This document shows positions 21,200 to 64,000 of a stretch of 64,000 nucleotides of DNA, piece after piece. A model generated the notes under the pieces. It was not told where the DNA came from, made no database searches, and saw nothing but the letters and a program-made list of their open reading frames with translations. The first letter of the stretch is position 1; each line of letters opens with the position of its first letter. The stretch covers positions 310,001-374,000 of the forward strand of contig NIVC01001024.1 in the NCBI GenBank assembly GCA_002269645.1. The letters are read 5' to 3'. Origin of the DNA: Macrostomum lignano (lineage: Eukaryota). The translations under genes and the position numbers were made by a program.

Positions 21200-22280
21200 A
21201 GATCCGCTAACACCCTCACAGATCCCATCAGATCCTCTACCATCCCAGATCCTCTACAACCCTCCCAGATCCTCTACCATCCCAGATCCTCTACTACCCA
21301 CTCAGAGATCCTCTACCATCCCAGATCCTCTACCATCCCAGATCCTCTACCATCCCAGATCCTCTACCACCCACTCAGAGATCCTCTACTATCCCAGATC
21401 CTCTACCACCCTCCAGATCCTCTACCACCCACTCAGATCCTCTACCACCCTCCCAGATCCTCTGCCACCCTCCCAGATCCTTACAATCCTTCCAGATCCT
21501 CTACCACCCTTCCAGATCCTCTGCCACCCTCCCAGATCCTCTACCACCCTCCTAGTTCCTCTACCACCCTCCCAGATCCTCACAATCCTCCCAGATCCTC
21601 TACCACCCACTCAGAGATCCTTTACCATCCCAGATCCTCTACCACCCTCCCAGATCCTCTGCAACCCACTGAGATCCTCTACCACCCTCCCAGATCCTCT
21701 GCAACCCACTGAGATCCTCTACCACCCTCCCAGATCCTCTGCCACCCTCCTAGATCCTCTGCCACCCTCCCAGATCCTCTACCACCCTCCCAGATCCTCT
21801 ACCACCCTCCCAGATCCTCTGCCACCCTCCCAGATCCTTACAATCCTCCCAGATCCTCTACCACCCTCCCAGATCCTCTGCAATCCTCCCAGATCCTCTA
21901 CCACCCTCCCAGATCCTCTACCACCCTCCCAGATCCTCTACCACCCTCCCAGATCCTCTACCACCCTCCCAGATCCTCTACCACCCACTCAGATCCTCTA
22001 CCACCCTTCCAGATCCTCTGCCACCCTCCCAGATCCTTACAATCCTCCCAGATCCTCTACCACCCTCCCAGATCCTCTGCCACCCTCCCAGATCCTTACA
22101 ATCCTCCCAGATCCTCTACCACCCTCCCAGATCCTCTGCCACCCTCCCAGATCCTCTACCACCCTCCCAGATCCTCTGCCACCCTCCCAGATCCTCTACC
22201 ACCCTCCCAGATCCTCTGCCACCCTCCCAGATCCTCTACCACCCTCCCAGATCCTCTGCCACCCTCCCAGATCCTCTACC
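21200..22280 (+). repeat. 20-bp minisatellite (CCCAGATCCTCTACCACCCT)n
   Basis: About 50 tandem copies. The Pro-rich ORFs over it are artefacts. Confidence 0.97.
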
Positions 22281-22291
22281 ACACTATGCTA

Positions 22292-22610
22292 GTGGTTTTA
22301 GCTCGTAGCTTAGTGTTTAGAGCGTCAGACTCACAAATTGAAGGTCAGAGGTTTGATTCCCGACTCCACCGAAACAATTGGTGTCATTGGGCAAGACACT
22401 TAACTCTGCATTGCTTCAGTTCAGCTGTAAAATGAGTGCCAGCATTAGCTGGGGTGATTGAGGGTGTGTGGCGACCCCCCCCTCTATCCTTGGACTGAAC
22501 AGCCGCACGCAACCTTCAGATGCGCCACGCAATAGCTGCGGCTGAGCTGTCGGTTGCACATCTGCCCATTAGGGCAGGTGTAATCAATTATTATTAATAT
22601 TATTATTAAT
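22292..22610 (+). mobile_element. tRNA-derived SINE (family A) with Deu/Nin-like core and (ATT)n tail
   Basis: tRNA-like head with a GGTTTGATTCC B box, then TTGGGCAAGACACTTAAC, and an ATT tail. Confidence 0.7.
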
Positions 22611-37644: not shown

Positions 37645-37667
37645 CCAGAAATTGCATTTAATACAGT

Positions 37668-40600: not shown

Positions 40601-41411
40601 CAACTCCAGTGTTTTCCAAAATGAAGTTCTGGCCATCAGCTCCTGCACTGCAGAGCTTCTCGCCACTGGCGTTACTGGTAAGAACATCATTTTCCATTCG
40701 GACAGCCAAGCTGCCTTGCACGCCATCAGTGGCTGCAGCACCAACTCTGCTACAGTCCTCGACTGTATCAAACTCCTCAACGTGTTGGGTTCCGCCAACA
40801 AAATTACCCTTAAGTGGGTTCCGGGGCATGTGGGGATCCGAGGAAATGAGTTGGCTGACACCCTTGCAAAAGTTGGTGCCTCCGGCTCCTCTCTCGGCCC
40901 CGAACCTCTTGTCCCGATTCCTGGCTGTGTCATCGACTCGCGCATCAAAGCGTGGATCAGGACTCAGCACCGCTCGACTTGGGCGAACCGCACGAACTGC
41001 AGGCAATCCAGAGGCGCTGTCCCTCAGCCCTCTCACCAGCTCCGGAAGCTCCTCTTGCGCCTCTCGCGCAGAGACATCCGGGCTGCCACCATGACCCTCT
41101 CTGGTCACGGCTGCTTCTCCAGGCACCAGTACCTGCAGGGCAACGCCACCAATGCCACCTGCAGTTTCTGCAATTCAGGTGACGAAACCGCTGAGCATTT
41201 CGTCAGCATCTGTCCCGCCTTCACGCGGGCCAGACTCACTTACCTCGGGCCACACACATCTATTACTGAAGCGTGCAAACCCTAAAACTTTAATCAGCTC
41301 ATGCGCTACCTTCGGGCCACCCGCAGGGCTGAACTCTCCTTTCCAGAGAGCACCATAGCTGCTGGCGACACTGGGGGACCTCCCTGGGCGGCGCCAACCC
41401 TCCGTCCATAG
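37668..41411 (+). pseudogene. LINE ORF2 (endonuclease, reverse transcriptase, RNase H, zinc finger), disabled
   Basis: LQINLQH, LIQEPW, GGDLNAH, SDH, KSPGPDG, FRPISL, PQGGVL, YADD, YTDGSK, WVPGH and CSFC...H...C are all present. Lesions: 4-bp insertion at ~38061, 1-bp deletion at ~39019, and GAA>TAA at 41283 relative to the 14.9-kb copy. Confidence 0.95.
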
Positions 41412-41505
41412 CGACGCGTCGGCCCTTCAGGGACTAGCGGAATGGGCGCTCACGCCTTCCCGCTGTCCCCTCCGGGACAGCCCTGCAGCTAAGTCAAGTA
41501 AGTCA

Positions 41506-44500
41506 ATGTTTTGGTTTCACCAATGTTTGGGTTCCACCAATGTTTGGGATTCACCAATGTTTGGGATTCACCAATGTTTAGAATCCACCAATGTTTAGGA
41601 TCCCCCAATGTTTGGGATCCACCAATGTTTGGGATTCACCAATGTTTGGGATCCAGTAATGTTTGGGTTGCACCAATGTTTAGGATTAACCAATGTTTGG
41701 GATCCACGGATGTTTGGGTTCCACCAATGTTTAGGATCCACCAATGTTTGAGATTCACCAATGTTTGGGATCCACCAATGTTTGGGTTCCACCAATGTTG
41801 GAGATTAACCAATGTTTGGGATTCACCAATTTTTTGGATCCACCAATGTTTGGGATTTTCCAATGTTTGGGTTCCACCAATGTTTAGGATCCACCAATGT
41901 TTGGGATTCACCAATGTTTGGGATCCACCAATGTTTGTTATTCACCAATGTTCGGGATCTACCAATGTTTTGGAAATACCGATCTTGGGGACTTCCCTAC
42001 GTTTAGGATCTAATAATGTTTGGGTTGCACCAATGTTTGGGATTCACCAATGTTTGGGATTCACCAATGTTTGGGATTCACCAATGTTTGGGATTCACCA
42101 ATGTTTGGGATTTACCAATCTTTGGGTTCAACCAATGTTTAATATTCAGCAATGTTTGGGTTCCACCAATGTTTAGGATTCACCAATGTTTGGGATCCAC
42201 CAATGTTTGGGATTCAACAATGTTAGGGATCAATCAATGTTTTGGATATACCGATGTTTGGGATTTTCCAATGTTTGGGGTCAACCAATGTTTAGGATCC
42301 ACCAATGTTTGGGATTCACCAATGTTTTGGATCCACCAATGTTTGGGATTTTCCAATGTTTGGGTTCCACCAATGTTTAGGATCCACCAATGTTTGGGAT
42401 TCACCAATGTTTGGGATCCACCAATGTTTGTTATTCACCAATGTTCGGGATCTACCAATGTTTTGGAAATACCGATGTTAGGGACTTTCCTACGTTTAGG
42501 ATCTAATAATGTTTCGGTTGCACCAATGTTTGGGATTCACCAATGTTTGGGATTCAACAATGTTGGGTATCAACCAATGTTTGGGATTTACCAATGTTTG
42601 GGATTCAACAATGTTGGGGATCAACCGATGTTTGGGATTTACCAATGTTTGGGATACACCAATGTTTGGGATTCACCAATGTTTGGGATCCACCAATGTT
42701 TGGGATTCAACAATGTTAGGGATCAATCAATGTTTTGGATATACCGATGTTTGGGATTTTCCAATGTTTGGGGTCAACCAATGTTTAGGATCCACCAATG
42801 TTTGGGATTCACCAATAATTGGGATCCACTAATGTTTTGGATAACCTAATGTTGGCAAAACCAATGTTTTATGATCCACGAGTATAAAGGATCAACCAGT
42901 GTTTAGCATCCAATAATGTTTTGGTTTCACCAATGTTTAGATTCCACCAATGTTTGAGATTTACCAATGTTTGGTTTACCAATAATTAAAATCCACCGAT
43001 GTTTGGGATCCACCAATGTTTAGGATCCACCAATGTTTGGGATACGCCAATGTTTGGGATCCACCAATGTTTAGGATCCACCAATGTTTAGGATCCACCA
43101 ATGTTAAGGATCCACCAATGTTTAGGATCCACCAATGTTTAGGATCCACCAATGTTTAGGATCCACCAATGTTTAGGATCCACCAATGTTTAGGATCCAC
43201 CAATGTTTAGGATACGCCAATGTTTGGGATCCACCAATGTTTAGGATCCACCAATGTTTGGGATACGCCAATGTTTGGGTTCCACCAATGTTTAGGATTC
43301 ACCAATGTTTGGGATCCACCAATTTTTGGGTTCCAGCAATGTTGGAGATTAACCAATGTTTAGGATTAACCAATGTTTGGGATCCACGGATGTTTGGGTT
43401 CCACCAATGTTTAGGATCCACCAATGTTTGGGATTCACCAATGTTTGGGATCCACCAATGTTTGGCTTCCACCAATGTTAGAGATTAACCAATGTTTGGG
43501 ATCCACCAATGTTTGGGATTTCCAATGTTTGGGTTCCACCAATGTTTAGGATCCACCAATGTTTGGGATACGCCAATGTTTGGGTTCCACCAATGTTTAG
43601 GATCCAGCAACGTTTGGGATTCACCAATGTTTTGGATCTACCAATGTTTGGGATTTTCCAATGTTTGGGTTCCACCAATGTTGGATATTAACCAATGTTT
43701 AGGATTTACCAATGTTTGGGATCCACGGATGTTTGGGTTTCACCAATGTTTAGGATCCACCAATGTTTGGGATTCACCAATGTTTGGGATCCACCAATGT
43801 TTGGGTTCCACCAATGTTGGAGATTAACCAATGTTTGGGATTCACCAATGTTTTGGATCCACCAATGTTTGGGATTTTCCAATGTTTGGGTTCCACCAAT
43901 GTTTAGGATCCACCAATGTTTGGGATTCACCAATGTTTGGGATCCACCAATGTTTGTTATTCACCAATGTTCGGGATCTACCAATGTTTTGGAAATACCG
44001 ATGTTAGGGACTTCCCTACGTTTAGGATCTAATAATGTTTGGGTTGCACCAATGTTTGGGATTCACCAATGTTTGGGATTCACCAATGTTTGGGATTTAC
44101 CAATCTTTGGGTTCAACCAATGTTTAATATTCAGCAATGTTTGGGTTCCACCAATGTTTAGGATCCACCAATGTTTTGGTTCAACCAACGTTTAAAATCA
44201 ACCAATGTTTTGGATCCACCAATGTTTGGGATTCAACAATGTTGGGGATCAACCAATGTTTGGGATTCACCAATGTTTGGGATTTACCAATCTTTGGGTT
44301 CAACCAATGTTTAATATTCAGCAATGTTTGGGTTCCACCAATGTTTGGGATTCACCAATGTTTGGGATCCACCAATGTTTGGGATTCAACAATGTTAGGG
44401 ATCAATCAATGTTTTGGATATACCGATTTTTGGGATTTTCCAATGTTTGGGGACAACCAATGTTTAGGTTCCACCAATGTTTGGGATTCACCAATAATTG

Positions 44501-47500
44501 GGATCCACTAATGTTTTGGATAACCTAATGTTGGCAAAACCAATGTTTTATGATCCACAAGTATAAAGGATCAACCAGTGTTTAGCATCCAATAATGTTT
44601 TGGTTTCACCAATGTTTGGGATTTACCAATGTTTGGTTTACCAATAATTAAAATCCACCGATGTTTGGGATCCACCAATGTTTAGGATCCACCAATGTTT
44701 GGGATACGCCAATGTTTGGGATCCACCAATGTTTAGGATCCACCAATGTTTGGGATTTTCCAATGTTTGGGTTCCACCAATGTTTAGGATCCACCAATGT
44801 TTGGGATTCACCAATGTTTGGGATCCACCAATGTTTGTAATTCACCAATGTTCGGGATCTACCAATGTTTTGGAAATACCGATGTTGGGGACTTTCCTAC
44901 GTTTAGGATCTAATAATGTTTGGGTTCCACCAATGTTGGAGATTAACCAATGTTTTGGATCCACCAATGTTTGGGATTTTCCAATGTTTGGGATCCACCA
45001 ATGTTTGTTATTCACCAATGTTCGGGATCTACCAATGTTTTGGAAATACCGATGTTAGTGACTTTCCTACGTTTAGGATCTAATAATGTTTGGGTTGCAC
45101 CAATGTTTGGGATTCACCAATGTTTGGGATTTACCAATCTTTGGGTTCAACCAATGTTTAATATTCAGCAATGTTTGGGTTCCACCAATGTTTAGGATCC
45201 ACCAATGTTTTGGTTCAACCAACGTTTAAGATCAACCAATGTTTTTGATCCACCAATGTTTGGGATTCACCAATGTTTGGGATTCACCAATGTTTGGGAT
45301 TTACCAATCTTTGGGTTCAACCAATTTTTAATATTCAGCAATGTTTGGGTTCCACCAATGTTTGGGATTCACCAATGTTTGGGATCCACCAATGTTTGGG
45401 ATTCAACAATGTTAGGGATCAATCAATGTTTTGGATATACCGATGTTTGGGATTTTCCAATGTTTGGGGTCAACCAATGCTTAGGATCCACCAATGTTTG
45501 GGATTCACCAATAATTGGGATTCACCAATGTTTTGGATAACCTAATGTTGGGAAAACCAATGTTTTATGATCCACAAGTATAAAGGATCAACCAGTGTTT
45601 AGCATCCAATAATGTTTTGGTTTCACCAATGTTTAGGTTCCACTAATGTTTGAGATTTACCAATGTTTTGTTTACCAATAATTAAAATCCACCGATGTTT
45701 GGGATCCACCAATGTTTAGGATCCACCAATGTTTGGGATACGCCAATGTTTGGGATCCACCAATGTTTAGGATCCACCAATGTTTGGGATACGCCAATGT
45801 TTGGGATCCACCAATGTTTAGGATCCACCAATGTTTGGGATACGCCAATGTTTGGGATCCACCAATGTTTAGGATCCACCAATGTTTGGGATACGCCAAT
45901 GTTTGGGATCCACCAATGTTTAGGATCCACCAATGTTTGGGATACGCCAATGTTTGGGATCCATCAATGTTTAGGATCCACCAATGTTTAGGATCCACCA
46001 ATGTTTGGGAGCCACAAATGTTTGGGTTGCACCAATGTTTGAGATTTACTAATGTTTGGTTACCAATAATTAAAATCCACCGATGTTTTGGATCCACAAA
46101 TAATCGGATTCACCAATGTTTGAGATCCACGAATGTTTGGGTTCCATCAATGTTTAAGATTTACTAATGTTAGGGTTACCAATACTTAAAATCCACCGTT
46201 GTTTGGGATCCACCAATGTTTAGGATCCACCAACGTCTTTGATCAACCAATTTTTGGGATCTAGGATATTTTCGATTCAAGAATTCTCGGGATCCACCGA
46301 TGTTTGTGATTCAACAATGTTAGGGATCAACCAATGTTTGGGAGAAACCAATGTTTGGGAGCAACCAATGTTTGGGATTTACCAATATTTAGGATCAACC
46401 AATGTTTGGAATTTACCAATGTTTAGAAGTGAGGAGCTGATTCGGGAGGTGATCAGTCACCCGAAAACTCCCACTTCCAGACACTTAAGCCTGGGAACAA
46501 AATCAAGTGATCACTTACTGTGGCGGGCTCCTCTTCTTTGTCGGGCAGGTTCTCCGATCTTGTTCCTTGTATCTTCTTTGTTGTGCACGTTTGTTGATTT
46601 GCTTCTTCAAATCTTCTTCTTCTCCGGAGGAATCTTCTTGAAGTCTAGAATCGGCCGAATGAGAGCGTGACAATCAGATCAGGCGACGTCGCAGTATTTC
46701 TCGAATGCAAAATCAATTTAGGCCTTAAGCTCAGTAATCAATATCAACGATGCGCCCTTATAACAAATCAACTTTCTGTAATAATCACGAGGTCCTCCAA
46801 GAAGGGCGTCTTCTTCTAGCAATAACGGAATCCGATTCGTGTGCTCCTATCGGTTAATCTAGGATAACCAAAATTAATCAACTCGATAATCCTCTAAGGG
46901 TATCGGAATCGGTCCGCAGATCCTATCCAATCCCTTAGGAAAATGGGAGGCCTCAAATTCAATGAACTCAGTTAAATCAACTGATAAATAACGGCCGGCA
47001 ATAAAATCGCTCTCAAATCAATTCAATAACAAAGCCTCGAACAAGAGCTCACCAACTGGTTTACTTCTTACTCAGAGACGTAGCCTCGAGTAGCTTCTGC
47101 AGTAAGCCCAAGATGTTTTGAGGCTGCTCCGAGTCTGAGATTTTTAGCTCGGATTTTGGCTTGAATTTATAGGGAAACTTGTTACCCTTGCCACTGTGTT
47201 GGTGGTAAGGGCGTTTAAACTGCGGGGGGGGGCTCGCTTGGCTGGGGCGGGTGCGTGCGGGGTGGCGTGTGCTGCGGGGGGCGGGGGGTCGCGGGGTTGC
47301 TAGCTTGATTTCATATTTAGTCCGGTCCTCCGCTTGTTCGCCGTGCGTTCGTGTTTGCTCAGAACAGCGGAGGTTCCGTTTCGCGCCATCCCTTGTCTTG
47401 CCTCGAACGTTCCTTTCCCCGCGGTTTAATCTTGAAAACAGATTATTTTTGGTAGGTGACAGTTTAGCGTTTTGGAAATTTGACCCCTATAGAATACATT

Positions 47501-48575
47501 AGGTTTGAACCTCATTACCATATTCAGTGTTCTAAATTTAAATGTTGCAAAAGATGGTCATTTGTTGCTTTCGTGGTCTTAAAAATAAAGTGTGACAATT
47601 TGCAGTTTTTAGCTTTTGAGTTTTCACGTTTTTACGTTACTACTTATAGTAGTTTACTTTGTACCGTATTTGGAGATCTCTACAGAAGCAACTAATGTTT
47701 GGAATTTATCAATGTTTCGGATTCACCAAAGTAAAGGATTCACCAATGTTTGGGATCCACCGATGTTGGGAATCCAGCGATGTTGAAATTCCTACAATTT
47801 TGAGGATCTAACAAGGTTTGAGATCCTACAATGTTTGTGATCCTACGATGTTTGGAATCCACCAATGTTTCGGATCCACCAATGTTTAGGATACACCAAT
47901 GTTGGGGATTAACCAATGTTTGGGATTTACCAATGTTTTCGGTCAACCAGTGTTTAGAATCATCCAATGTTTGGGATCCACCAATTTTTGGGATCCACCG
48001 ATGTTTGGGTTCCACCAATGTTACGGATCAACCAATGTTTGAGATCTAGGATATTTTCAATCCAAGAATTCTCGGGATTCACCAATGTTTGGGATCCACC
48101 AAAGTCTTTGATCAACCAATGTTTGAGATCTAGGATATTTTCAATCCAAGAATTCTCGGGATCAACCAATGTTTGGGATTCAACAATGTTTAGGATCCAC
48201 CAATGTTGGGGATTTACCAATGTTTGGGATCAACCAATGTTTGCGATTTACCAATGTTTTCGGTCAACCAGTGTTTACAATCCACCAATGTTTGGGATCC
48301 ACCAATTTTTGGGATCCACCATATTTTTTAATTACCTAATTTTGGGGAAACCAATGTTTATGATCCACGAATATTTAGGATCCACCAGTGTTTGGGATCC
48401 ACCAATGTTTTGGTTCAACCAATGTTTGGGTTCAACCAATGTTTGGGTTCAACCAATGTTTGGGATTCACTAATGTTTAGGAGCAACCAATGTTTGGGAT
48501 TTACTAATGATTGGAAGCAACTAATGTTTGGGATTTACCAATGTTTGGGATCCACTGATGTTGGGGATCCAGCGA
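41506..48575 (+). repeat. 17-bp satellite (CCAATGTTTGGGATCCA)n with higher-order structure, interrupted by a solo LTR
   Basis: The 17-bp period is direct. Variant blocks recur, and a 51-bp trimer runs at ~45690-45960. Confidence 0.97.
46430..47684 (-). mobile_element. Solo LTR (1255 bp) with 4-bp TSD GAAG
   Basis: TG...CA termini with GAAG at 46426-46429 and 47685-47688. Removing it restores GAAGCAACTAATGTTTGG, which is seen intact at ~48515. A TATAAA on the minus strand at ~47165 suggests orientation. Confidence 0.85.
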
Positions 48576-48592
48576 TGTTAAAATTCCTAAGT

Positions 48593-49220: not shown

Positions 49221-49614
49221 TTCGTTACAATACGCTTTAAAACTTTTAGACTGCAATAAAATCGATATTTTTACGCATGGTATTTTGCTGTGTGGCGGGT
49301 GGGTGTTGAGCGGAATGGGAGCTGTTTCTTGTCATAGCGCGAGCGGCGTTGGTAGCCACTCCCAGTTGGCTCTACCCCCCCCCCCCAAAACGCTATTAAA
49401 ACGAACATGTTGAATAGCTGCATGAGAACTCCACCATAAGTCAAACCGGAACTTTCTTCAATGAACGGAATACGGTTTATCATGGCCTTGTCAAAGGAGA
49501 CAAGAATTGCAACGATTGCCGAACTGGCGCTCTCGCTGTCATCTTAAATTTCTCGCTGTGTTTTATTAAAACACCTTGAAAACACAAAACTGCTAAACAT
49601 AAAAGTAGCGCAAT

Positions 49615-51675
49615 GTCAAACATAGAAGAGCCACCATGTCAAACATATACGTGACTTCATGTCAAACATTAAATAGCCACTATGTCAAACATAAAAGAGC
49701 CACCATTTCGAACATTAAAGAGCTACCATGTCAAACATAAAGGAGTCACCATGTCAAACATATACGTGACTCCATGTCAAACATTAAAGAGCCTCCATGT
49801 CGAAAATTAAAAAGCCACCATGTCAAATATAAGAGAGCCACCATGTCAAACATAAAAGAGCCACCATTCCGAACATTAAAGAGCCACCATATCAAACATC
49901 TACGTGACTCCATGTCGAACATTAAAGAGTCACCATGTCAAACATAAAAGAGCCACCATGTCAAACATATACGTGACTCCATGTCAAACATTAAAGAGCC
50001 ACCATGTCAAACATTAAAGAGACACCATGTCAAACATTAAAGAGCCACCATGTTGAACATTAAAGAACCACAATGTCAAACATTAAAGAGCCACCATGTC
50101 AAACATAAGAGAGCCACCATGTCAAACATTAAAGAGTCACAATGTCAAACATTAAAGAGCCACCATTTCGAACATTAGAGAACCACAATGTCAAACATAA
50201 GAGAGCCACCATGTCGAACATTAAAGAGTCACCATGTACAACATAAAAGAGCCACCATGTCAAACATAAAAGAGCCACCATGTCAAACATAAGAGAGCCA
50301 CCATGTCAAACATAGAAGAGCCACCATTTCGAACATTAAAGTGTCACCCTGTCAAACATCGACGTGACTCCATGTCGAACATTAAAGAGTCACCATGTCA
50401 AACATAAAACAGCCACCATGTCAAACATAAAAGAGCTACCATGTCTAACATTAAAAAACCACCTTTTCGAACATTAAAGAGCCACCATGTCGAACATTAA
50501 GGATGTACCATGTCAAACATTTAAGAGCTACCATGTCAAACATAAAAGAGCCACTTTGTCGAGCTTTAAAGAGCTACCATGTCAAACATAAAGAAGCCGA
50601 CATGTAGAACATTAAAAAGCCACCATGTCAAACATCAAAGAGCCACCATGTCAAACATATACGTGACTTCATGTCAAACATTAAAGAGCCACCATGTCAA
50701 ACATTAAAGAGCCACCATGTTGAACATTAGAGAACCACAATGTCAAACACAAGAGAGCCACCATGTCGAACATTAAAGAGTCACCATGTAAAACATAAAA
50801 GAGCCACCATGTCGAACTTTAAAGAGCCACCATGTCAAACGTAAAAGAGTCACCATGTCGAACTTTAAAGAGCCACCATGTCAAACGTAAAAGAACCACC
50901 ATGTCGAACATAAAAGAGCCGACATGTAGAACATAAAAAAGCCACCACGTCAAACATGAACGAAACACCATGTCAAACATTAAAGAGCCACCATGTCAAA
51001 CATAAAAGAGCCACCATGTCGAACATTAAAGGGCCACCATGTCGAACATAAAAGAGCCACCATGTCAAACATTAAAGGACCACCATGTCAAACATTAAAG
51101 AGGCACCATGTCAAAAATTAACAGCCACCATGTCTAACATTAAAGAGCCACCATGTCAAACATTGAAGAGCTACCATGTCAAACATTAAAGAGCCACTTT
51201 GTCGAGCTTTAAAGAGCTACCATGTCAAACATAAAGGAGCCGACATGTAGAACATTAAAAAGCCACCACGTCAAACATTAACGAGCCACCATGTCAAACA
51301 TAAAAGAGCCACCATGTCGAACATTAAAGAGCCAAAAGTGTAAAACATAAAGGAGCCACCATGTCGAACACTAAAGAGCCACCACGTCGAACATCAAAGA
51401 GCCACCATGTCGAATATTAAAGAGCCACCATGTCAAACAATAAAGAGCCATCATGAAGAACATTATAGAGTCAGAATGTCGAACATTAAGGAGCCACCAT
51501 GTGGAACATTAAAGAGCTACCATGTCAAACATTAAAGAGCCAGCATGCCAAACATTAAAGAACCACTTTGTCGAACATTAAAGAGCCACCATGTGGAACA
51601 TTAAAGAGCTACCATGTCAAACATTAAAGAGCCACCATGTCGAAACATTATTGAGCCACCATGCCAAACATAAAA
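49615..51675 (+). repeat. 23-bp satellite (AAAGAGCCACCATGTCAAACATT)n
   Basis: ATGTC recurs at 49981, 50004 and 50027. About 90 copies. Confidence 0.97.
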
Positions 51676-54789: not shown

Positions 54790-56292
54790 CAGGTGGTCCA
54801 GGAAGGTCTCCCAGATTACAAACAGAGTTTTCTCTGCACTGGATTGATGAATTGGGCTGAAACTTGACCTGCTTAAACTTTATTCTGAATATGATTTTTT
54901 GTCTAAAAATCTTAGCAATTGCTAAAAAAATCACGAAGTTACAGCAGTTTTTCTAAAAAAACACCGTTTTCACTTACTACTGATGAGCACATTTCATTCC
55001 AGACTTACACGACTTACACGCCAGTTGAAAGATTTAAAATGGCATCCTGGCTGGATGAATTGAAGAGTCCGCTGTTGTTCCAGCGGCGATGGCGTCGTGA
55101 GTTCAATTTGGCTGCCAAACAACGCCCTCCAGATGCTAAGACCATCAAAGATGCACTTAAGGTGGCCTGTGAGTTTTGTTTGGCTCGACGACCAATTTCT
55201 GGGCGTCCACGGACTGCTCGTTCTGCTGAGAATGTGGAACAAGTTGTTCAACACTTCAAGGAGCGACCACAACAGTCAGTACGTCGTGCGAGTCGGGAGC
55301 TGAAAGTTAGCCATCAGTCCATCCTTCGTGTGCTGGATAAGAGTGGCTTTCACCCCTATCGCATGCGCCGTCAACAGGCAATGAATGAGGCCGGCAATGA
55401 GGCGCGAGTGCTATTCGCAACTGATATGCTGGAGATGTTTGACAGTGATCCTGAAATGTTAACCAACATCATTTTCTCTGATGAGGCTCATTTCTCCCTG
55501 CATGGCCACAATAACACCTGGAACTCGCGGTATTGGGCCATTGAAAACCCAGATTTCTCTATCCAGATGCCCCTTCACAGACCACGCGTCTCATGCTGGG
55601 CTGGAATTTGGTCCCACGGCATTGTTGGACCTTTCTTCTGTGAGGATGCGCAGGGTGCAAATGTTACGGTGAATTCTGAGCGGTACGTGGAAATGCTGGA
55701 TCCAAAGTTTCTGCCTGTGGTTCAGAATTACGAGGCATTTGTTGCTGGTGACTTGTGGCTGATGCAGGATGGTGCTCCAGCCCACATCGTGCTTAATGTG
55801 CGTGAATGGATTCAGCACAACTTTGAGGAGCGCGAAATCGGACGCTATGAGACAATTCATTGGCTTGCACCCAGTCCTGATCTCAACCCTAAGGACTTCT
55901 TTGTCTGGGGATGGGTGAAGGACAACGTCTACCGACAGCCAGTGGACAGCCTGGATGAGCTAAGGCACGGAAAACGCAGCTAATGCATGATATGCCAGTG
56001 GATTTTGGTGTCAACAGCCTTAATAGCTTTAAGAAGCGCCTGCAGACTTGTATCGATAACAAAGGTCATCATGTGGAGCACTGACTAACAGTTGCATAGC
56101 AGATTGTGCTAAAACCCTACTGATTTAACAAAAAACTGCTGTAACTTCATGATTTTTTAGCAATTGCTAAGATTTTTAGACAAAAAATATTTTCAGAATA
56201 AAGTTTAAGCATGTCAAGTTTCAGCCCAATCCATCAATCCAGTGCAGAGAAAACTCTGCTTCTAGTCCGGGAGACCTTTCTGGACCTCCCTG
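54790..56292 (+). mobile_element. Tc1/mariner DD41D (rosa/Visitor-type) transposon, ~163-bp TIRs, TA TSD
   Basis: TIRs at 54790-54952 and 56131-56292, with TA flanks. Confidence 0.92.
55009..56084 (+). pseudogene. DD41D transposase with C-terminal frameshift (~55970) and probably lost start codon
   Basis: IIFSDEAHF, QDGAPAH and SPDLNPKD, with 41 residues counted between the second and third Asp. The C-terminus KRLQTCIDNKGHHVEH* is in another frame. ACG at 55009 sits where the ATG is expected. Confidence 0.88.
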
Positions 56293-57170: not shown

Positions 57171-58077
57171 TAACTCAAAATAAGTTTTGAGACTTTGCCG
57201 CAACAGTTCGTTCTTTATTCAATGTTAAACTGAACATTGTATACCAAAACTCTGTCACAGAAACTCTTGTTTGAGTTTGAGATTTGTCTGAGAGCTCATT
57301 CTAACTCTGGTGAGACTGGTATGAATTCAGTTCCCCGTTACACTATTTAGGGTTGCTATCAGGGGTGAGATTTTCACTGAATGCTTGAAATGGTCTCTCC
57401 TCCTCCCTCCACTTCTGTCCGCCCCTCCTATCCTCGTGCTCTCCCTCCTTCCCTTTCCTCTCTTCCTTCTCCTTTCTCATTTTAAGGAAGAGACCTGCAC
57501 CAGTGATTTCGGGGAGGTGAAAAGGCGTCAACTTTTCATTTTATAAAAGCAAAATCTGAAGCAATTGTTCGCACTTTGCTGCTTCTATCCAACCAAAATA
57601 CACTACTGTCAAGTTTTACCGCGAATAGTAGCATCTTGTCTTGAACAGATTGTTTCGATCCCGTAGCCACATTTTCCCCACTAAGGCTTGAATTACTGGC
57701 TCAATTGACGTGGAAAATGATTTATCCCCTTTTGGACCCGCGTAATATGCAGCTTAAACTGGGCACCCGATGATATCAGTAGCGAATGAACTCAAGGTCT
57801 TACTGGCCGCATCGGCCGCCGCCAAAGAATCCGCCGCCAAGTGGAGCACTGTACTGCTGTTGCTGCTGCTGCTGGTGGGGTCTTGTAGCCTATGGTTCAT
57901 TTATCTTGCCGGGCAACGCTTTTGCCCCCATTCTGGAGTGTCTCTTTATTTGTGTGGCTATTTTAAATACACCCGTTGCAAGCCCTCTCTCCCTTGCTAA
58001 GTTTGGCGAAGCAACCACGAAATTATCGTTTACACTTTCAAATTTCCAGCTAAGCCGCCACCGTTCGGCCTGTCTTA

Positions 58078-58316
58078 ATGAGCGAGGTCACCGACGTGAA
58101 AAAAATTATACGCTTAAGACCGTCAAGTAGGTCTTTTTTGAATGATGAATGTAGTTTAAATTCCCATAGAAGAGTTTTTACCTGTCGAACTTTTAGCTCA
58201 TTCTTCTGAACTTTACGAAAGGAAGGTTAACACTACCAAACTGTTGTCTTTATTATTGCTTTCAGCTCTTCTTGAAAGTAGTTCTGCCGATGATTTCAAA
58301 TTTGAAGATGAACTAT
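58078..58316 (+). CDS. Multi-caspase-domain gene, putative micro-exons 1-2 (58078-58126, 58266-58316)
   Basis: ATG, donor A|GTAGGT, acceptor TTTCAG and donor T|GTAAGT. All are phase 1 and compatible with the acceptor at 58566. Confidence 0.5.
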
Positions 58317-58565
58317 GTAAGTTTTACAATCAAGTTTTGCTAAAATTTTTCCTTGCAAACGAACTAAAATACGCGATGTACAGATTTTACACTGTTGAGA
58401 CTGGTAGTTTCAAGTAGAATCCTGTAGCTATTTCTGCTTTGCTCAGAGCGGCGACCCTTACTACTAGAGTTATAGAACTGAACTAAGCTACAATAGCAAA
58501 GAAAACATGCTGGTCTCTTGAATAGCCAACTATGAAAAACCCTATGCCAAATAATGATATTTAAG

Positions 58566-59951
58566 GTTCCCGAAGATTGGCTCTGTTCTTCGACGCTCGC
58601 AATGAGTCAGTGACAGATGAGTACGCCGACTTTCTAAAAGAGTGCAGTTTTAACGTAAAGAGGAGCCTGGAACAGCAGTATGAAAGCAAACTGGGCTCGT
58701 GTCTATCCGACTCCGTGAACAATTCCGAGGTCCAGCAGCTAATTGTAGTCGTGATAGCTGGCAATGCTTTCATGAAGGACGTCCTAGATTTCATGACAAT
58801 GGGTACATTTCCCAACTGCCAAAACAGATGTTTATTATTTTGTCGCGCTGGTGAAGAAAGCCTGGATGACACGAAACTTGCAAACGAATTTTCGAATGCG
58901 AATTTTAAATACAAGTGTACAACTATCGCTTACATCGTGGCTAAGGAAACTAAAAGCGTACAGGGCTTCTATAGAAGCTTCCTGGATGACTGCAGGTGCA
59001 GTTGGGAGACTAAAAGTATATTTTCTATCCTGGAGACGGCATTGAAGCTACCACTCGCTTACGAGTCCCTTTCTCTGTATCATAGAGAAGGAAAGCTCGG
59101 TGGAGATTTCCTGCGCGACATATTCAAATTTATCAGGGAACCCAAGAGCAACCTTGATGAAGTTGATGCCTTACCAGCAGCATCAGAGCAGACTGCTCAA
59201 GACAAACCGACTGATTGGATGCGCGAGAATGCCTCAATAATCTATCCGAATCGGCGCAATCTGAAAAAGCCTCGAGCGTTGGTCATCATCAAATATGACC
59301 GAGGAGACTCTCTATACTCTGCTCTGCAAGTTGACCGCAGCAGAGTTATGCGTATGCTAAAAAATCTTGGCTACATTGTATCGGACGTGCAAACCCGCTC
59401 CAATGACGCCTTGAAAAGAAGGATCGAGCTTTTTTCAGAAGATACTGAACACGGTGACTCCTGCATCCTTGTCGTGCTGTCCCAGACGCAGCAGCAGCTG
59501 AGCAGCTCTACTGTCATGAATTTGTACAAAAGCTTGGCTATTGGCGAAAAGCTCGAGGCCAAGCCCCGACTCTTTATTCTGCACGAGTGGGATGTCACAA
59601 CACTGCAGACAGACTCTGTTACTGATGGTTTCAGCAGCAATACTTATGAGATCATTGAAGATGCTGTGGACGGTTTGCAGGCCTATTTTCGCAATCATGA
59701 TTCAACCATCAAGGTTCATCCACACAGCGGCATGGTGTTCGGTCGATCAGTTAGTAGCGATGTGACAAGAGCAGAGGGCAGCGCTTTTATTCAGACACTG
59801 TGCGAAACTTTCAGACAGTATGGTCACACAGAGGACGTGGCCTCTATGATTACCATAATTAATGAGCACAAACGACTAGATGAATCTGTGCCCAAGTGGT
59901 TTATTCAGACTGGCAAGCTCTTTTATCTCATGGGAACAGACGGAATCCAGG
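58566..59951 (+). CDS. Multi-caspase-domain gene exon 3: degenerate caspase-fold domain plus catalytically dead caspase-like domain
   Basis: KKPRALVII...LKNLGYIV...HGDSCILVVLSQT...KPRLFILHEW...EGSAFIQTLCETF follows the caspase p20/p10 pattern with His>Gln and Cys>Trp. Donor G|GTAAGA. Confidence 0.85.
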
Positions 59952-60402
59952 GTAAGAGAACTTTTTTTAGCTCAATGCATGTATACTTTTCAATTCGAAC
60001 TTTGGCAAAAGTGATTTCAGTTTTGGCAACACGATAAATTATGACTGTCACTGTTACTGTCAAAGTGACTTAAAATTCTTTGTGATCAATATCATTGTAG
60101 TTCTGTAGCTCAGACTGCTTGTGCCACCGCCAACATTTTTTGGTGTTAGTGTGCGACACTGGTGGTGTAAATTTTGACCTAACGGTTCCTTCTAGTTGCC
60201 TTTAAACAATACAATCTTGAATGACAAATCTGTGATTGACTGCTTTGGCCGTGTTTACATTTATGTCGAGGTACTTCACTAGTCGTCTTCAGTCTCTCCT
60301 TGTTGTTGTCAAAATTGGTCACTTTTGCCAAAGTCGAAATTGAAAAGTTACAACTATGCAGAAATCATTATTGCATAATCATTTGCACTATTTTGCTTTT
60401 AG

Positions 60403-60504
60403 CTACCGGTCAGGAGGTTTCGCAACAAAGTCTACAGAAGAAATCTAAAGAGCCTAAACAAAGTCTAGAGAAGAAATCTAAAGAACCTGAAAGCGCCAGA
60501 ATTG
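60403..60504 (+). CDS. Multi-caspase-domain gene exon 4 (34-aa Lys/Glu linker with an 11-aa duplication)
   Basis: TTTTAG acceptor and G|GTAAGT donor, phase 1-1. Encodes QSLQKKSKEPK-QSLEKKSKEPE. Confidence 0.75.
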
Positions 60505-60836
60505 GTAAGTGGCATATTAAATTATCGAGAAACACCTCTTACGACGTAGAGATCCGATTCATGCGTTATAGCCATATAAAGCTATGCGCAACATCTTTGC
60601 AAGACTACTCACTTCTAATTATATCTGTTCCGTTTTGCTGCGATGCCAAACATTTTTATCCTATGAAGAATTATTTCATCTAAAAACCTTCTGATAAGTA
60701 CATGTATTTCAGAGAGATACGCTTGAGTTATAAACATTATTAGATTCATGTATTAAAGAACAACTTTGCTTGCATGAGTCAATAAAACTCGCTAATCTCA
60801 GCAAAGCTCAGCCGTACTTGCACTTTTTAATTTCAG

Positions 60837-62299
60837 ATCGAACAGGATTTGCGATGATTCTCACCGAAGGACAGTTTGATGGGGCCAGAAACTATCAGAT
60901 GTTTCTGGAGTATGCAGCCTTCAAAGTGCTCTTCGATTACACGGATGGCAATTCGAGCTCAATCAAGACAGCCATCATGCTTCCAAAAGAAACTGAAGGA
61001 AATGTTGTCCTTTATCTAGTTGTACGCACACATCGCAACGACATCGTCTTGCAAGAAATAGTCGATGAACTTTCTAAACAGCAATCGTCTCAAAAGTGCA
61101 GCAGTAGCATTTTGCTTATCTTCTGCGAAGTGTCCGAGTCTGAAGAGAATTTCGCGAACACTCAGATGCCCGAGGAGCTACCCGAGAAGTTTAGCCTTGT
61201 CAGAGTTGGCGGGAGTCGGTGCGGCGTGATTGAATTTCTGGACTCCCTGCTGGAATCTCCCAGGAAGAACATCTCTCTCAATGGCAGCCTTGTGGTTGGT
61301 AGAGATTTTTCCTGCCACTCCTGCCATCACGGCATAATGCACTGCAAAGTCAATGATGAAAACCCAGGCTGGAGGAAGAGAATCACTTGGCTTGAAAACT
61401 TTTATATAGAAGAGAGTTCATCGCACCCAAATCTGTCTTCAATTGACGTTAGTGACGACACGCAGACGAGACCAGCAATAAGAGGTTCTCTCCGATTAGA
61501 GAGTTTCAGAAGCGAATGGAATGCACCTGGATTAGACACTCAAGAGTGCAAGGCTGTAGCCCTCATCGTTCAAAACGTTGTCTTCCAGAAAAAGGAACTA
61601 TCTACTCGGTTCGGAAGTCAGTACGACTGCCAGCGAATGGCTGACACTTTGCTCAGGCTTGGCTACTCAGTGAGCATCAGGTCGAATCTCACCAAAGTAG
61701 AAATTGAAAGCGAATTAGACATGTTTTGCAGTGACGCACGACACGGCAGCTCAGTCGTAGTTGCTTTTATGTCTCACGGATGTCTCGGTGAAGTAGTTGG
61801 TTTCGACGGCGAATCAGCGAAGGAAAGTAAAATTCTAAAACGAATTTCCAAAGGAAACCGCACAAGTGAAAAGCAGCAATTGGTCATCTTCCAGAACTGT
61901 CTAGACCCTGGTCGATTGCCTAAATCAGAGCTGTCGTTTTTTCCTGGCATGATCGTCGCTCACTCGACTTCGCCGAATGAAAGCAGCTATCGAATGACAG
62001 ACAGAGGCAGTCGGTTCATCCAGTGTCTGTGCACTGTTCTCGACCTGTTCGCCGACACGTGCGACATTGCGTCAATGGTTCCTATCGTTAATTATGTGGT
62101 GCAAAACGCTACTTTTTATATGGGCATCAGCCAGCTGCCCTGGTGGTCTGTGCAGACAAGCAAGAAATTTTGGATTCGAGTCAATGAGCCTCCTCAAAGC
62201 AGTCGTGAATCGCGCCATCAAGCCAATTCAGCTAGGAACCAAACAACGAATGACTGCAGGGTTCAGGTGACGGAACTTCTTCAAAAAATGCGGTTGTAA
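60837..62299 (+). CDS. Multi-caspase-domain gene exon 5: degenerate caspase-fold domain plus caspase domain with catalytic dyad
   Basis: TTTCAG acceptor in phase 1. KAVALIV...TRFGSQYD...LGYSV...VVVAFMSHG...LVIFQNC...IVAHST...SYR...GSRFIQCL. Confidence 0.9.
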
Positions 62300-62938: not shown

Positions 62939-64000
62939 GTAATAAATTACTACGTAGTATAATAACATAATTATTACAAAAGGAGCGTGTTTCCGTAAGT
63001 GCTTCGATGGAACAAATTTGTTTTTATTGTTTTAATGAAAGACGTTAGACTGACCATTCTAAACAGTTTAAGCCAGTCTAAGTTAAAAACAGCAGCAGAA
63101 ATGCTCTCGCTATAACTAACCGTTGCCGAATTTTTAATTGAGAAAAATGTTATCCTAGTGTATGTTTTCATTATTAAAACTAATTATAAATGATTACAAA
63201 GTTTTCCTGATTTTTAATGTTTTATTGAAAGAAGTATAATTAGCATTGGAGTACGAGTTGTATTTAATGTAATCGATCTTTTGAATTTGAATGTATCAAA
63301 ATCGCAAACTGCGACTGGCCCTCGATAGTAGTGCATCACTGCATTAGATTTTCCTCCAGCTCTGATTATTTTATTTATAGTAAACATAAAACTAACAGGC
63401 TCGTAAACTGCTGATTCCTAATTCAATTGTTATTTAAATGTGAACGATTATCAATCAAGTACAACAACTAAGTTCAAATAAATCAAAGGAAACTAAGAGT
63501 TTTCCGCTTGTCACCGAATGTCTGCTTTTTTTATTTTGACCAACGTTTAGTATAACTTAGCTAGTTAATATATAGGTGTATCTACAAGTGTATAGGAGTA
63601 CGAGTGCATATAGTAGTATAGAAAGTATATATACATGGTTACTAGCTTAGCTAGCTTAGAATTAGTTTTACATTACAAAAAAGCTTTATGGGATATTTTA
63701 ACTTTCCATCCAACAATCCAAATTTCCCCCTTTCAGATGAATTACAAAAAAATTGTTATATAACTAAGCCTTATCTGGTATTCGAAGAAACGATCCAACT
63801 CAGTATCGATGGCTGATTTTCCTGACACATTTGAGACCGAAAGCCCAGCTACTAGTAAGTGCAAACCTACAATAAAATTATTTAGCAAATAAATTCGAAC
63901 AAACATAGGCTGATTGATTCCTCTGAGTAATTTTTCCCACATTTAAATTTTCAGTATTGCACGAACTTTCAACAGTTTCAGGTCTGTTAGATGTTTAAAA

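What the first reader, a model, noticed from the sequence alone, without database searches (positions are those of the whole stretch)
58078..62299. Single-chain protein with up to four tandem caspase-fold domains, only the last catalytic
Seen: five exons with canonical, all phase-1 junctions join into one 3051-nt frame (~1016 aa). Two clear caspase domains are present (~59260-59930 and ~61540-62180). The segments before each repeat the caspase secondary-structure order in degenerate form. D1 (~58570-59110) reads LALFFD / YADFLKECSFNV / LIVVVIA / CLLFCRAG / IAY...QGFYRSFLD. D3 (~60840-61310) reads GFAMIL / GARNYQMFLEYAAFKV / VVLYLVVRTH / ILLIFC. No CARD or DED prodomain is evident. Established: caspases activate by dimerisation, and cFLIP-L is a pseudo-caspase that regulates caspase-8 as a heterodimer. 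Inference: a (degenerate-caspase + caspase) unit was duplicated within the gene, giving a protein that could form intramolecular pseudo-dimers and so bypass adaptor-driven recruitment. I know of no described animal caspase with this architecture.
Basis: partly seen in the sequence, partly recalled or inferred. Interest (0 to 1): 0.88.

Follow-up and report, generated by a model that had tools for sequence, protein, structure and literature searches.

The report
Four-domain tandem caspase in a flatworm
A gene of the flatworm Macrostomum lignano encodes one 1016-residue chain with four caspase-fold domains, of which only the last keeps the catalytic residues; this extends the known "dead caspase domain fused to a live one" design (coral caspase-X, mammalian caspase-16) from two domains to four.

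Summary
Five GT-AG exons, all phase 1, join into a 3051-nt frame of 1016 aa. The window is Macrostomum lignano contig NIVC01001024.1. UniProt already holds 1016-aa models that are 99% identical. A transcript-derived GenBank CDS on a 99.8%-identical copy starts at the same ATG and joins exons 1-5.

- **D2 and D4** are Pfam caspase domains (E=1.5e-11 and 3.2e-30).
- **D4** keeps Arg787, His843, Gln882, Cys884 and Arg915, all invariant across paralogs. D2 has lost both His and Cys.
- **D1 and D3** have no Pfam hit but are homologous to each other (hhalign P=2e-12).
- **The D3-type profile** matches a caspase profile in the correct register (P=6e-7; shuffled controls P>=0.02).
- **AlphaFold models**, built from these domains alone, give the caspase strand/helix order. 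Their Foldseek hits are almost exclusively caspases (best E about 4-6e-5). A TIR reading, suggested by UniProt names of paralog fragments, was rejected.

Paralogs with 2, 3 and 4 domains exist, all in M. lignano. The equivalent introns share position and phase, which supports duplication of a [degenerate caspase + caspase] exon.

Intramolecular pseudo-dimerisation remains untested. This is a new variant of a known kind.

The parts
58078..58126 (+). Exon 1. The start codon is at 58078 and the donor reads CAA|GTAGGT. With exon 2 it encodes a 34-aa N-terminal tail with no recognisable prodomain.
   Evidence: The same ATG is the start of GenBank CDS PAA47018.1 on the 99.8%-identical copy L003. No CARD or DED was found by Pfam.
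58266..58316 (+). Exon 2: 51 nt, phase 1 at both ends.
   Evidence: It is present in P0001 and P0005.
58566..59951 (+). Exon 3: 1386 nt, phase 1 at both ends. It encodes unit 1, which is D1, a linker and D2.
   Evidence: The single-unit paralog P0017 (aa 51-547) aligns along the whole exon.
58568..59083 (+). D1 is a compact (about 170 aa), degenerate caspase-fold domain. The Arg179 loop is deleted and there is no His. A Cys (LFCRAG) sits at the catalytic-Cys position.
   Evidence: D1-type versus D3-type profile: Prob 97.7%, P=2e-12. AF2 gives pLDDT 65.7, pTM 0.67 and the element order b1 a1 b2 a2 b3 a3 b4 h b5 a4 a5 b6. The top 19 Foldseek PDB hits are caspases, cFLIP or MALT1, with the best being drICE 3sir_B at E=3.7e-5.
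59156..59167 (+). A DEVD|A motif (aa 231-234) in the D1-D2 linker. It is a candidate caspase cleavage site by inference only, and it is not conserved in the paralogs.
59228..59950 (+). D2 is a full-size pseudo-caspase domain. LSQTQ replaces LSHG, LHEWD replaces QACRG, and the Arg179 position is lost.
   Evidence: PF00656 E=1.5e-11. D2-family profile versus caspase profile: Prob 99.7%, P=2.5e-25, with residue mapping. D2 versus D4: P=1.5e-30.
60403..60504 (+). Exon 4: a 102-nt, phase 1-1 linker exon. It is Lys/Ser/Glu/Gln-rich and contains a 33-nt repeat in two copies (60424-60488).
   Evidence: It is included in P0001 and PAA47018.1 and skipped in frame in P0002.
60837..62299 (+). Exon 5: 1463 nt. 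It encodes unit 2, which is D3, a linker, D4 and a C-terminal tail. The stop codon TAA is at 62297-62299.
60839..61354 (+). D3 is a compact, degenerate caspase-fold domain. The Arg179 loop is deleted. The His in RTHRN is one position out of register and is not conserved in paralogs. The Cys in LIFCEV aligns with the catalytic Cys.
   Evidence: hhalign versus a 109-sequence caspase profile: Prob 92.1%, P=6.3e-7 over 100 columns, in register from b1 to QACRG. Controls: reversed profile P=0.13, and 60 column shuffles gave a minimum P of 0.022. AF2 gives pLDDT 75.4 and pTM 0.79. All 50 top Foldseek hits are caspases or MALT1, with the best at E=6.2e-5.
61520..62218 (+). D4 is the catalytically equipped caspase domain. 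The key residues are Arg787 (61607-61609), His843 (61775-61777), Gln882 (61892-61894), Cys884 (61898-61900) and Arg915 (61991-61993).
   Evidence: PF00656 E=3.2e-30. Alignment to caspase-3 structures gives E=2e-11. These residues are invariant in the 7-sequence family alignment.

Best explanation
This is an intact Macrostomum lignano gene for a prodomain-less, four-module caspase laid out as D1 (degenerate caspase fold), D2 (pseudo-caspase), linker, D3 (degenerate caspase fold) and D4 (active-type caspase).

Shown:
- The modules lie in one reading frame.
- All four have a caspase-type fold or sequence signature.
- D1 is homologous to D3, and D2 is homologous to D4.
- Only D4 keeps the His/Cys dyad and the Asp-binding Arg/Gln/Arg triad.
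- The gene belongs to a family found only in M. lignano, with 2-, 3- and 4-module members.
- Each [compact fold + caspase] unit is one phase-1/phase-1 exon.

Inferred history: an ancestral [compact pseudo-caspase + caspase] exon, of the kind seen in P0017, was duplicated in tandem. The upstream caspase copy then lost its catalytic residues.

Inferred mechanism: D4 is an Asp-specific cysteine protease. Its obligatory dimer partner is supplied in cis by one of the dead caspase-fold modules, through the beta6/alpha5 face. This is what is proposed for coral caspase-X and mammalian caspase-16, and what is seen in trans for cFLIP-L with procaspase-8. Activity would then be set by intramolecular packing and by cleavage or rearrangement of the linkers, rather than by CARD/DED-mediated recruitment.
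For: Frame and splice sites.

Existing models: UniProt holds 1016-aa models that are 99% identical.

Transcript support:
- GenBank CDS PAA47018.1 lies on a copy 99.83% identical over 4222 nt. It starts at the same ATG and reads through the exon 3-4-5 junctions.
- That annotation is built from RNA-seq transcripts that are cut at trans-splice and poly(A) sites (PMC5730564).

Paralogs:
- PAA75222.1 (1017 aa, 34% identical) aligns in a single stretch, query 32-986.
- PAA73902.1 (43% identical) spans D2-D3-D4.

Domain evidence:
- D2: (P=2.5e-25).
- D4.
- D1~D3: (P=2e-12).
- D3-type profile versus caspases: P=6.3e-7, in register, with clean nulls.
- The profile of D1/D3 domains searched against PDB sequences puts drICE and the caspase-6 large subunit on top (E=0.014-0.24) and returns no TIR.
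- AF2 and Foldseek.

Unit and exon evidence.

Mechanistic precedents: PMC4715348 and PMC12198278.
Against: - No RNA read was examined for this exact copy. On the window's own contig GenBank annotates only a 162-aa partial product.
- The D1-type profile alone shows no significant similarity to caspases (P=0.14). Its caspase assignment rests on its link to D3 and on an AF2 model of moderate confidence (pLDDT 65.7) whose alignment included D3-type rows.
- Foldseek TM-scores are moderate (0.43-0.62).
- D4 has QNCLD rather than QACRG, and a short loop between the Cys and beta5. Activity is therefore inferred, not shown.
- No inter-domain interface was modelled.
- No orthologue outside M. lignano was found among 1.84 billion representatives. 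Conservation can therefore be judged only from paralogs in a recently polyploid genome in which some copies carry frameshifts.
Confidence: 0.7

Rival explanations
1. Same protein, different mechanism. The three dead caspase-fold modules do not pair with D4 in cis. Instead they act between chains, as oligomerisation or decoy surfaces that bind D4 of other molecules, bind other caspases of the expanded family, or bind substrates. In that case they tune or inhibit activity much as cFLIP does, or they replace CARD/DED as a homotypic recruitment module.
For: The compact D1/D3-type domain sits at the N-terminus of an otherwise ordinary active caspase in P0017, which is the position of a prodomain. 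Deleting the dead domain of coral caspase-X increased killing, which points to a negative regulator (PMC4715348). The caspase-16 authors also list intermolecular pairing as an alternative.
Against: Nothing found here argues against it. Tethering in one chain strongly favours contacts in cis because of the high local concentration, but that is a general argument and not a test.
Confidence: 0.3
2. Gene-model artefact. Two adjacent [compact domain + caspase] genes, at 58566-60037 and about 60770-62299, are separate cistrons. They were merged because an in-frame splice path happens to exist. M. lignano does have trans-splicing and multi-gene transcriptional units.
For: Single-unit genes exist (P0017). 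The models for this locus vary: 608, 660, 738, 1016, 1060 and 1821 aa. The 1821-aa model clearly fuses two neighbouring genes. Reading through the exon-3 donor reaches a stop at 60037.
Against: The transcript-derived CDS PAA47018.1 crosses exons 3-4-5, and the pipeline behind it cuts at SL and poly(A) sites. The four-part order and the intron positions and phases are conserved in a 34%-identical paralog. The first in-frame ATG of a stand-alone second gene lies inside strand beta1 of D3.
Confidence: 0.08
3. D1 and D3 are not caspase-derived. They would be TIR domains, as UniProt names two paralog fragments, or some other flavodoxin-like alpha/beta domain. That would make the protein TIR-pseudocaspase-TIR-caspase.
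For: UniProt names A0A1I8IZE5 and A0A1I8GM93 'TIR domain-containing protein'. TIR and caspase are both three-layer alpha/beta folds, to my knowledge with a similar parallel strand order. A TIR structure (4c6s) does appear in the D1 Foldseek list.
Against: No Pfam TIR hit appears at E<=10 in any family member. No TIR appears at E<=10 in the profile search against PDB sequences, while caspases rank first. hhalign against a validated TIR mini-profile gives P>=0.17, whereas equally small 3-sequence caspase profiles give P=2e-5 to 2e-3. In Foldseek the first TIR is at rank 38 (E=0.035, TMq 0.42), behind 19 caspase-type hits. The D3 list has none in its top 50.
Confidence: 0.07
4. A decaying, non-functional duplicate in a neo-polyploid genome. 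Its dead domains would simply record loss of function.
For: The copy in L003 has a 2-nt deletion that truncates the product in D3. The neighbouring paralog copy carries a Trp-to-stop change and frameshifts in both L001 and L002.
Against: The window's copy has an uninterrupted 3051-nt frame across four introns. D4's catalytic and S1 residues are invariant in paralogs only 26-41% identical. The loss of His and Cys in D2 is shared by all paralogs, so it is old and stable. The 2-nt deletion falls in short G runs and could be an assembly error.
Confidence: 0.07

Closest known systems
Coral caspase-X (Acropora millepora AmCaspase Xa-d; Moya et al. 2016, PMC4715348)
   Same: One chain carries an N-terminal inactive caspase domain, which has lost His and Cys, and a C-terminal active caspase domain, with no CARD or DED. 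It was modelled as an intramolecular copy of the cFLIP/procaspase-8 heterodimer. One A. digitifera prediction has four caspase domains.
   Different: It has two domains rather than four, and both are recognisable by standard domain searches. Here two of the four are cryptic, compact (about 170 aa) and invisible to Pfam. Orthology was not tested: caspase-X was reported as coral-restricted, and this family was found only in M. lignano. Caspase-X has cDNA and cell-killing data; this protein has none.
Mammalian caspase-16 (Eckhart et al. 2025, PMC12198278)
   Same: Its prodomain is a caspase-like fold that arose by duplication of the caspase-domain exons. [quoted passage not shown] The authors propose intramolecular dimer-like packing.
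   Different: It has one dead and one live domain. The duplicated unit there is spread over several exons, whereas here each [compact fold + caspase] unit is a single phase 1-1 exon and the whole unit was duplicated again.
cFLIP-L / procaspase-8 heterodimer (PDB 3H11, 3H13)
   Same: A catalytically dead caspase-fold partner for a live caspase domain. 3h13 and 3h11 appear among the Foldseek hits of D1 and D3.
   Different: cFLIP is a separate polypeptide that is recruited through tandem DEDs. There are no DEDs here and the partners are covalently linked. No sequence relationship to cFLIP beyond the general caspase fold was shown.
Mytilus coruscus caspases with two CASc domains (PMC10967218)
   Same: A lophotrochozoan caspase expansion with duplicated caspase domains and frequent loss of the pentapeptide and S1 residues.
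   Different: They are described only at the domain-count level. No four-domain or cryptic-domain members were reported, and their relationship to this family was not tested.

Membership tests
Caspases (MEROPS C14A, Pfam PF00656) | Sequence match to the caspase domain model above the curated threshold | tested here: met
   D4 scores 106 bits and D2 44.9 bits against a cutoff of 21.4. D1 and D3 score nothing, so this feature is met for D2 and D4 only.
Caspases (MEROPS C14A, Pfam PF00656) | Catalytic dyad His237/Cys285 (caspase-1 numbering) | tested here: met
   D4 has His843 in MSHG and Cys884 in FQNC, aligned to caspase-3 SHG and QAC and invariant in the family. The dyad is absent in D2, which has LSQTQ and LHEWD. 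D1 and D3 keep only a Cys at the aligned position.
Caspases (MEROPS C14A, Pfam PF00656) | S1 pocket Arg179/Gln283/Arg341 for Asp specificity | tested here: met
   D4 has Arg787, Gln882 and Arg915, all invariant. The Arg179 loop is deleted in D1 and D3.
Caspases (MEROPS C14A, Pfam PF00656) | Cleavage after Asp, dependent on the catalytic Cys | not testable with these tools
   This needs recombinant protein and Asp-P1 substrates.
Caspase/hemoglobinase fold (applied to D1 and D3) | Element order b1-a1-b2-a2-b3-a3-b4 ... b5-a4-(a5)-b6, and best structural matches to caspases | tested here: met
   AF2 secondary structure. Foldseek: all 50 top hits for D3 and the top 19 for D1 are caspases, cFLIP or MALT1. 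These are predicted models of moderate confidence, not experimental structures.
Tandem inactive+active caspases (coral caspase-X / caspase-16 type) | Dead caspase-fold domain upstream of a live one in the same polypeptide, with no CARD or DED | tested here: met
Tandem inactive+active caspases (coral caspase-X / caspase-16 type) | Transcript or cDNA proof of the single chain | tested here: inconclusive
   The transcript-derived GenBank CDS on a 99.8%-identical copy joins exons 1-5, and the paralog PAA75222.1 is full length. No reads were inspected for this copy.
Tandem inactive+active caspases (coral caspase-X / caspase-16 type) | Intramolecular dimer-like packing of the dead and live domains | not tested
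Tandem inactive+active caspases (coral caspase-X / caspase-16 type) | Common descent with caspase-X or CASP16 | not tested
   In an exhaustive search, only M. lignano proteins match beyond the D4 region. No phylogeny was made, and independent origin seems likely.
TIR domain (Pfam PF01582/PF13676) | Sequence or structural match to TIR | tested here: not met
cFLIP | Tandem DED prodomain plus pseudo-caspase | tested here: not met
   No DED was found by Pfam. The N-terminal tail is only 34 aa.

The most novel reading that the evidence does not exclude
The compact, roughly 170-residue D1/D3-type module would be a previously unrecognised minimal caspase fold that replaces CARD/DED prodomains in a Macrostomum-specific caspase family. 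In the four-module proteins, the chain would fold into a self-contained assembly of intramolecular pseudo-dimers (D3:D4, and D1:D2 or D2:D4). Such a caspase would need no adaptor platform and would be switched by linker cleavage, for example at DEVD231-234. This would sit in a phylum reported to lack FADD (PMC11463336).
Probability: 0.25. Interest if true: 0.7.

Novelty: new variant of a known kind. Interest (0 to 1): 0.5.

Why it matters
Caspases must pair to become active, and how that pairing is controlled is the core of cell-death signalling. Proteins that carry their own dead partner in the same chain are a recently recognised solution, seen in coral caspase-X and mammalian caspase-16. 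Their biochemistry is barely known, and caspase-16 is a pseudogene in human and mouse.

Macrostomum lignano can be made transgenic (PMC5730564) and, to my knowledge, is amenable to RNAi. It has a graded series of 2-, 3- and 4-module versions. This would allow a direct test of whether a built-in pseudo-caspase activates or restrains the live domain.

The result also shows that standard domain searches under-count caspase-fold modules. Two of the four are invisible to Pfam, and fragments of the paralog are named TIR in UniProt. Caspase surveys of invertebrate genomes may therefore miss such architectures.

Tried and rejected
1. TIR hypothesis for D1/D3. It was prompted by my own reading of the LALFFD...YADFLKE pattern and by the UniProt names of P0010 and P0015. 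It was rejected.
2. Single-sequence comparisons of D1 or D3 with D2 or D4 (BLASTP, hhalign) showed nothing. Only family profiles gave signal.
3. Pfam on D1/D3 and on eight such domains gave only sub-threshold noise: DUF7000, Gin and Peptidase_M9_N.
4. The search for homologous proteins with the domain alignment and with the full-length family alignment returned nothing beyond near-identical copies. The diverged paralogs came only from the exhaustive representatives search.
5. The spliced model could not be submitted to the representatives search, so the 99%-identical P0001 was used instead.
6. The look-up of encoding contigs on P0001 found no record.
7. A Cys/His-rich stretch after D3 (FSCHSCHHGIMHC) was considered as a zinc knuckle and dropped. 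The Cys and His residues are not conserved in paralogs, and AF2 places strand b6 there.
8. The D3-type profile is no closer to the family's own D4 (P=9.7e-6) than to generic caspases (P=6.3e-7). The age and source of the compact module therefore cannot be stated.
9. A literature search for the locus tags found nothing. The supplement of PMC11463336 is not held.


Full report
**What is in the sequence**

Reading 58078-62299 on the + strand gives two long open frames: 58577-60037 and 60770-62299. Five exons join them: 58078-58126, 58266-58316, 58566-59951, 60403-60504 and 60837-62299. Every donor is GT and every acceptor is AG. All junctions are phase 1. The joined frame is 3051 nt and encodes 1016 aa with no internal stop.

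**Origin and existing models**

- The product is 99% identical, over its full length, to UniProt A0A1I8J0J1 of the free-living flatworm Macrostomum lignano, which is also 1016 aa. Two further 1016-aa entries sit in the same cluster.
- The window itself lies on GenBank contig NIVC01001024.1 of assembly GCA_002269645.1. On that contig only a 162-aa partial product is annotated.
- A third genomic copy, NIVC01004605.1, is 99.83% identical over the 4222-nt gene. It carries GenBank CDS PAA47018.1. That CDS starts at the same ATG and reads exon 1 through exon 5. It stops early only because of a 2-nt deletion in short G runs inside D3.
- The GenBank annotation derives from genome-guided RNA-seq transcripts that are cut at trans-splice and poly(A) sites (PMC5730564). 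This counts as indirect transcript support for the D2-exon 4-D3 junctions.
- Model P0002 skips the 102-nt exon 4 in frame.

**The two obvious domains**

PF00656 matches D2 (E=1.5e-11) and D4 (E=3.2e-30).

D4 aligns to caspase-3 structures (E=2e-11). It has Arg787, His843-Gly844, Gln882, Cys884 and Arg915 at the positions of Arg179, His237, Gln283, Cys285 and Arg341. All of these are invariant in a seven-sequence family alignment whose members are 26-41% identical.

A profile of the D2 domains of four family members matches a 109-sequence caspase profile with Prob 99.7% and P=2.5e-25. It has LSQTQ in place of LSHG and LHEWD in place of QACRG. D2 is therefore a full-size pseudo-caspase. The D2 and D4 profiles match each other at P=1.5e-30.

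**The two cryptic domains**

D1 and D3 have no Pfam hit, and single-sequence comparisons show nothing.

An exhaustive HMMER search of 1.84 billion representatives found diverged relatives. All of them turned out to be M. lignano proteins:

| Protein | Length | Relation to this gene |
|---|---|---|
| PAA75222.1 (P0013) | 1017 aa | 34% identical, aligned in one stretch over query 32-986 |
| PAA73902.1 (P0012) | 838 aa | 43% identical, spans D2-D3-D4 |
| PAA86652.1 (P0014) | 691 aa | D1-D2-active caspase, with no D3 |
| PAA82799.1 (P0017) | 580 aa | one D1/D3-type domain plus one active caspase |

With these relatives, the following tests were possible:

- D1-type and D3-type domains align collinearly. 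Their profiles match with Prob 97.7% and P=2e-12 over 138 columns.
- The D3-type profile matches the caspase profile with Prob 92.1% and P=6.3e-7 over 100 columns. The register is correct from strand b1 through the LSHG position to QACRG, and the Cys of LLIFCE falls on the catalytic Cys.
- Controls were clean. The reversed profile gave P=0.13. Sixty column shuffles gave a minimum P of 0.022 and a maximum score of 20.0, against an observed score of 47.2. Random three-caspase profiles still gave P=2e-5 to 2e-3 in the same register.
- A profile of the eight D1/D3-type domains, searched against PDB sequences, put drICE and the caspase-6 large subunit on top (E=0.014-0.24).

**Structure prediction**

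AlphaFold2 was run on alignments that contained only D1/D3-type sequences and no canonical caspases.

- D3: pLDDT 75.4, pTM 0.79, element order b1 a1 b2 a2 b3 a3 b4 (h) b5 a4 b6.
- D1: pLDDT 65.7, pTM 0.67, the same order plus a5.

In Foldseek searches against the PDB, all 50 best hits for D3 are caspases or MALT1. The best is at E=6.2e-5, TMq reaches 0.60, and the list includes the caspase-8 chain of the cFLIP complex 3h11. For D1, the top 19 hits are caspases, cFLIP-L (3h13) or MALT1, and the best is drICE at E=3.7e-5.

**The TIR rival**

UniProt names two fragments of the paralog "TIR domain-containing". I had independently suspected TIR from the sequence pattern. It fails every test:

- No Pfam TIR hit in any family member.
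- No TIR in the profile search against PDB sequences.
- P>=0.17 against a TIR mini-profile.
- In Foldseek, the first TIR is only at rank 38 for D1 (E=0.035), and none appears in the D3 top 50.

**Catalytic state of D1 and D3**

- The loop that carries Arg179 is deleted.
- The His position is not conserved in the family.
- A Cys at the catalytic position is kept in most members.

These domains are relics, not enzymes. "Only the last domain is catalytic" is supported as an inference from residues. No activity was measured. D4's QNCLD pentapeptide, and its short loop between the Cys and b5, are atypical.

**Evolutionary reading**

- Exon 3 (1386 nt, phase 1-1) encodes D1+D2, and exon 5 encodes D3+D4.
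- The single-unit paralog P0017 aligns along the whole of exon 3.
- In this gene, the phase-1 acceptor lies three to four residues before strand b1 of both D1 and D3.
- The tandem paralog has acceptors at the same positions and in the same phase before its D1' and D3'. The acceptor contexts before D3 and D3' are ...AATTTCAG|ATCG... in both genes.

Loss of His and Cys in the upstream caspase copy followed, before the paralogs diverged. The three-module paralog PAA86652.1 shows that the layout has varied.

**Mechanism**

Established knowledge says that caspase catalytic domains are active only as dimers, and that cFLIP-L activates procaspase-8 as a heterodimer. The authors of coral caspase-X and of caspase-16 both proposed that a dead domain in cis plays this role (PMC4715348; PMC12198278). 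In coral, removing the dead domain increased cell killing.

By analogy, I think D4 is most likely paired in cis with D3 or D2, and regulated through that pairing and through the linkers. One linker carries a DEVD|A motif at 59156-59167, which is not conserved in paralogs. Pairing between chains is a live alternative.

**Novelty**

The claim that no such animal caspase is described is too strong.

- Coral caspase-X (2016) is cDNA-verified and functionally tested. One unverified A. digitifera prediction has four caspase domains.
- Mammalian caspase-16 was described in 2025.
- Four Mytilus coruscus caspases have two CASc domains.

The 2024 survey of lophotrochozoan apoptosis genes covered M. lignano. 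The only unusual platyhelminth caspase it reports there is one with a kinase prodomain (PMC11463336).

What is new here:
- the four-module form, supported by transcript-derived models;
- the recognition of a compact, Pfam-invisible caspase fold used as a prodomain;
- a graded paralog series of 2, 3 and 4 modules in a species for which a transgenesis method exists (PMC5730564).

I rate this as a new variant of a known kind, of moderate interest.

**Limits**

- No RNA reads were inspected.
- The AF2 models are of moderate confidence. The D1 model is not independent of D3, because they share an alignment.
- No orthologue outside M. lignano was found.
- Some genomic copies carry frameshifts, which may be decay or assembly error.

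Noticed in passing
window 63809-63853 (+); L001 16.4-19.6 kb; L002 16.4-19.3 kb: The first exon of a tandem paralog starts 1.5 kb downstream of the stop codon. It reads MADFPDTFETESPAT, against MADFSDIFETESPAT in PAA75222.1. On both contigs that hold the rest of it, this neighbour copy has a Trp-to-stop change (NDCNLK*NRTVG) and several frameshifts, whereas PAA75222.1 on another contig is intact. This is either a decaying copy or assembly error. UniProt A0A1I8GZQ7 (1821 aa) is a fused model of the two neighbouring genes.
   Followed up: partly
L003 about 9119-9129 (corresponds to window about 61208-61214): The 99.83%-identical copy on NIVC01004605.1 has GTTGCGGAGTC where the window has GTTGGCGGGAGTC. 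This 2-nt loss in G runs truncates GenBank PAA47018.1 at 660 aa inside D3. It may be a real frameshift or a long-read homopolymer error.
   Followed up: partly
window 58078-58951: On the window's own contig, GenBank annotates only a 162-aa partial product (BOX15_Mlig033010g1), although the 1016-aa frame is intact. The gene is under-annotated there.
   Followed up: yes
paralog fragments P0010 and P0015 (UniProt A0A1I8IZE5, A0A1I8GM93): These are automatically named 'TIR domain-containing protein'. No TIR signal could be reproduced with Pfam, profile comparison or Foldseek, so the name looks like a false positive on a degenerate caspase fold.
   Followed up: yes
window 60424-60488: A 33-nt tandem repeat, two copies at 93% identity, lies inside linker exon 4. 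It encodes SLQKKSKEPKQ / SLEKKSKEPES. One database model skips the exon in frame.
   Followed up: partly
window 57770-58130 (+): Some database models (P0003, P0009) use a different 5' end. They read ANELKVLLAASAAAKESAAK...LLLLLLL, a hydrophobic run, upstream of and overlapping exon 1 in another frame, and join it directly to LALFFD. The true N-terminus is therefore not settled.
   Followed up: no
window 29325-30485 (-): An intronless 387-aa ORF carries Glyco_transf_7N and Glyco_transf_7C (E=4.6e-36 and 1.6e-17). It looks like a beta-1,4-galactosyltransferase-type gene.
   Followed up: partly
window 36124-41282 (+); 14801-15469 (+); 49-1349 (+); 54919-55980 (+): Mobile elements. There is a LINE-type element with an ORF1-like frame (36124-37644, not scanned against Pfam), an endonuclease, a reverse transcriptase and RNase H (37942-41282). 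A second fragment of its C-terminal end lies at 14801-15469. An LTR-retrotransposon integrase, split over two frames, lies at 49-1349. A frame with a weak, sub-threshold match to a Tc3-type transposase HTH domain (25.7 bits against a cutoff of 31.5) lies at 54919-55980.
   Followed up: partly
window 41504-46424, 47694-48579, 49613-51675: Large satellite arrays are present: a 17-nt unit (CAATGTTTGGGATCCAC, about 290 and 52 copies) and a 23-nt unit (about 90 copies). The 17-nt array produces long spurious ORFs reading MFRIHQCLGFTNVWDPP.
   Followed up: partly
window 19580-20188 (+): An ORF matches DUF4819 (E=4e-12). It is followed by Pro/Ser-rich repetitive frames at 20583-22292. This may be part of a larger multi-exon gene and was not examined further.
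   Followed up: no
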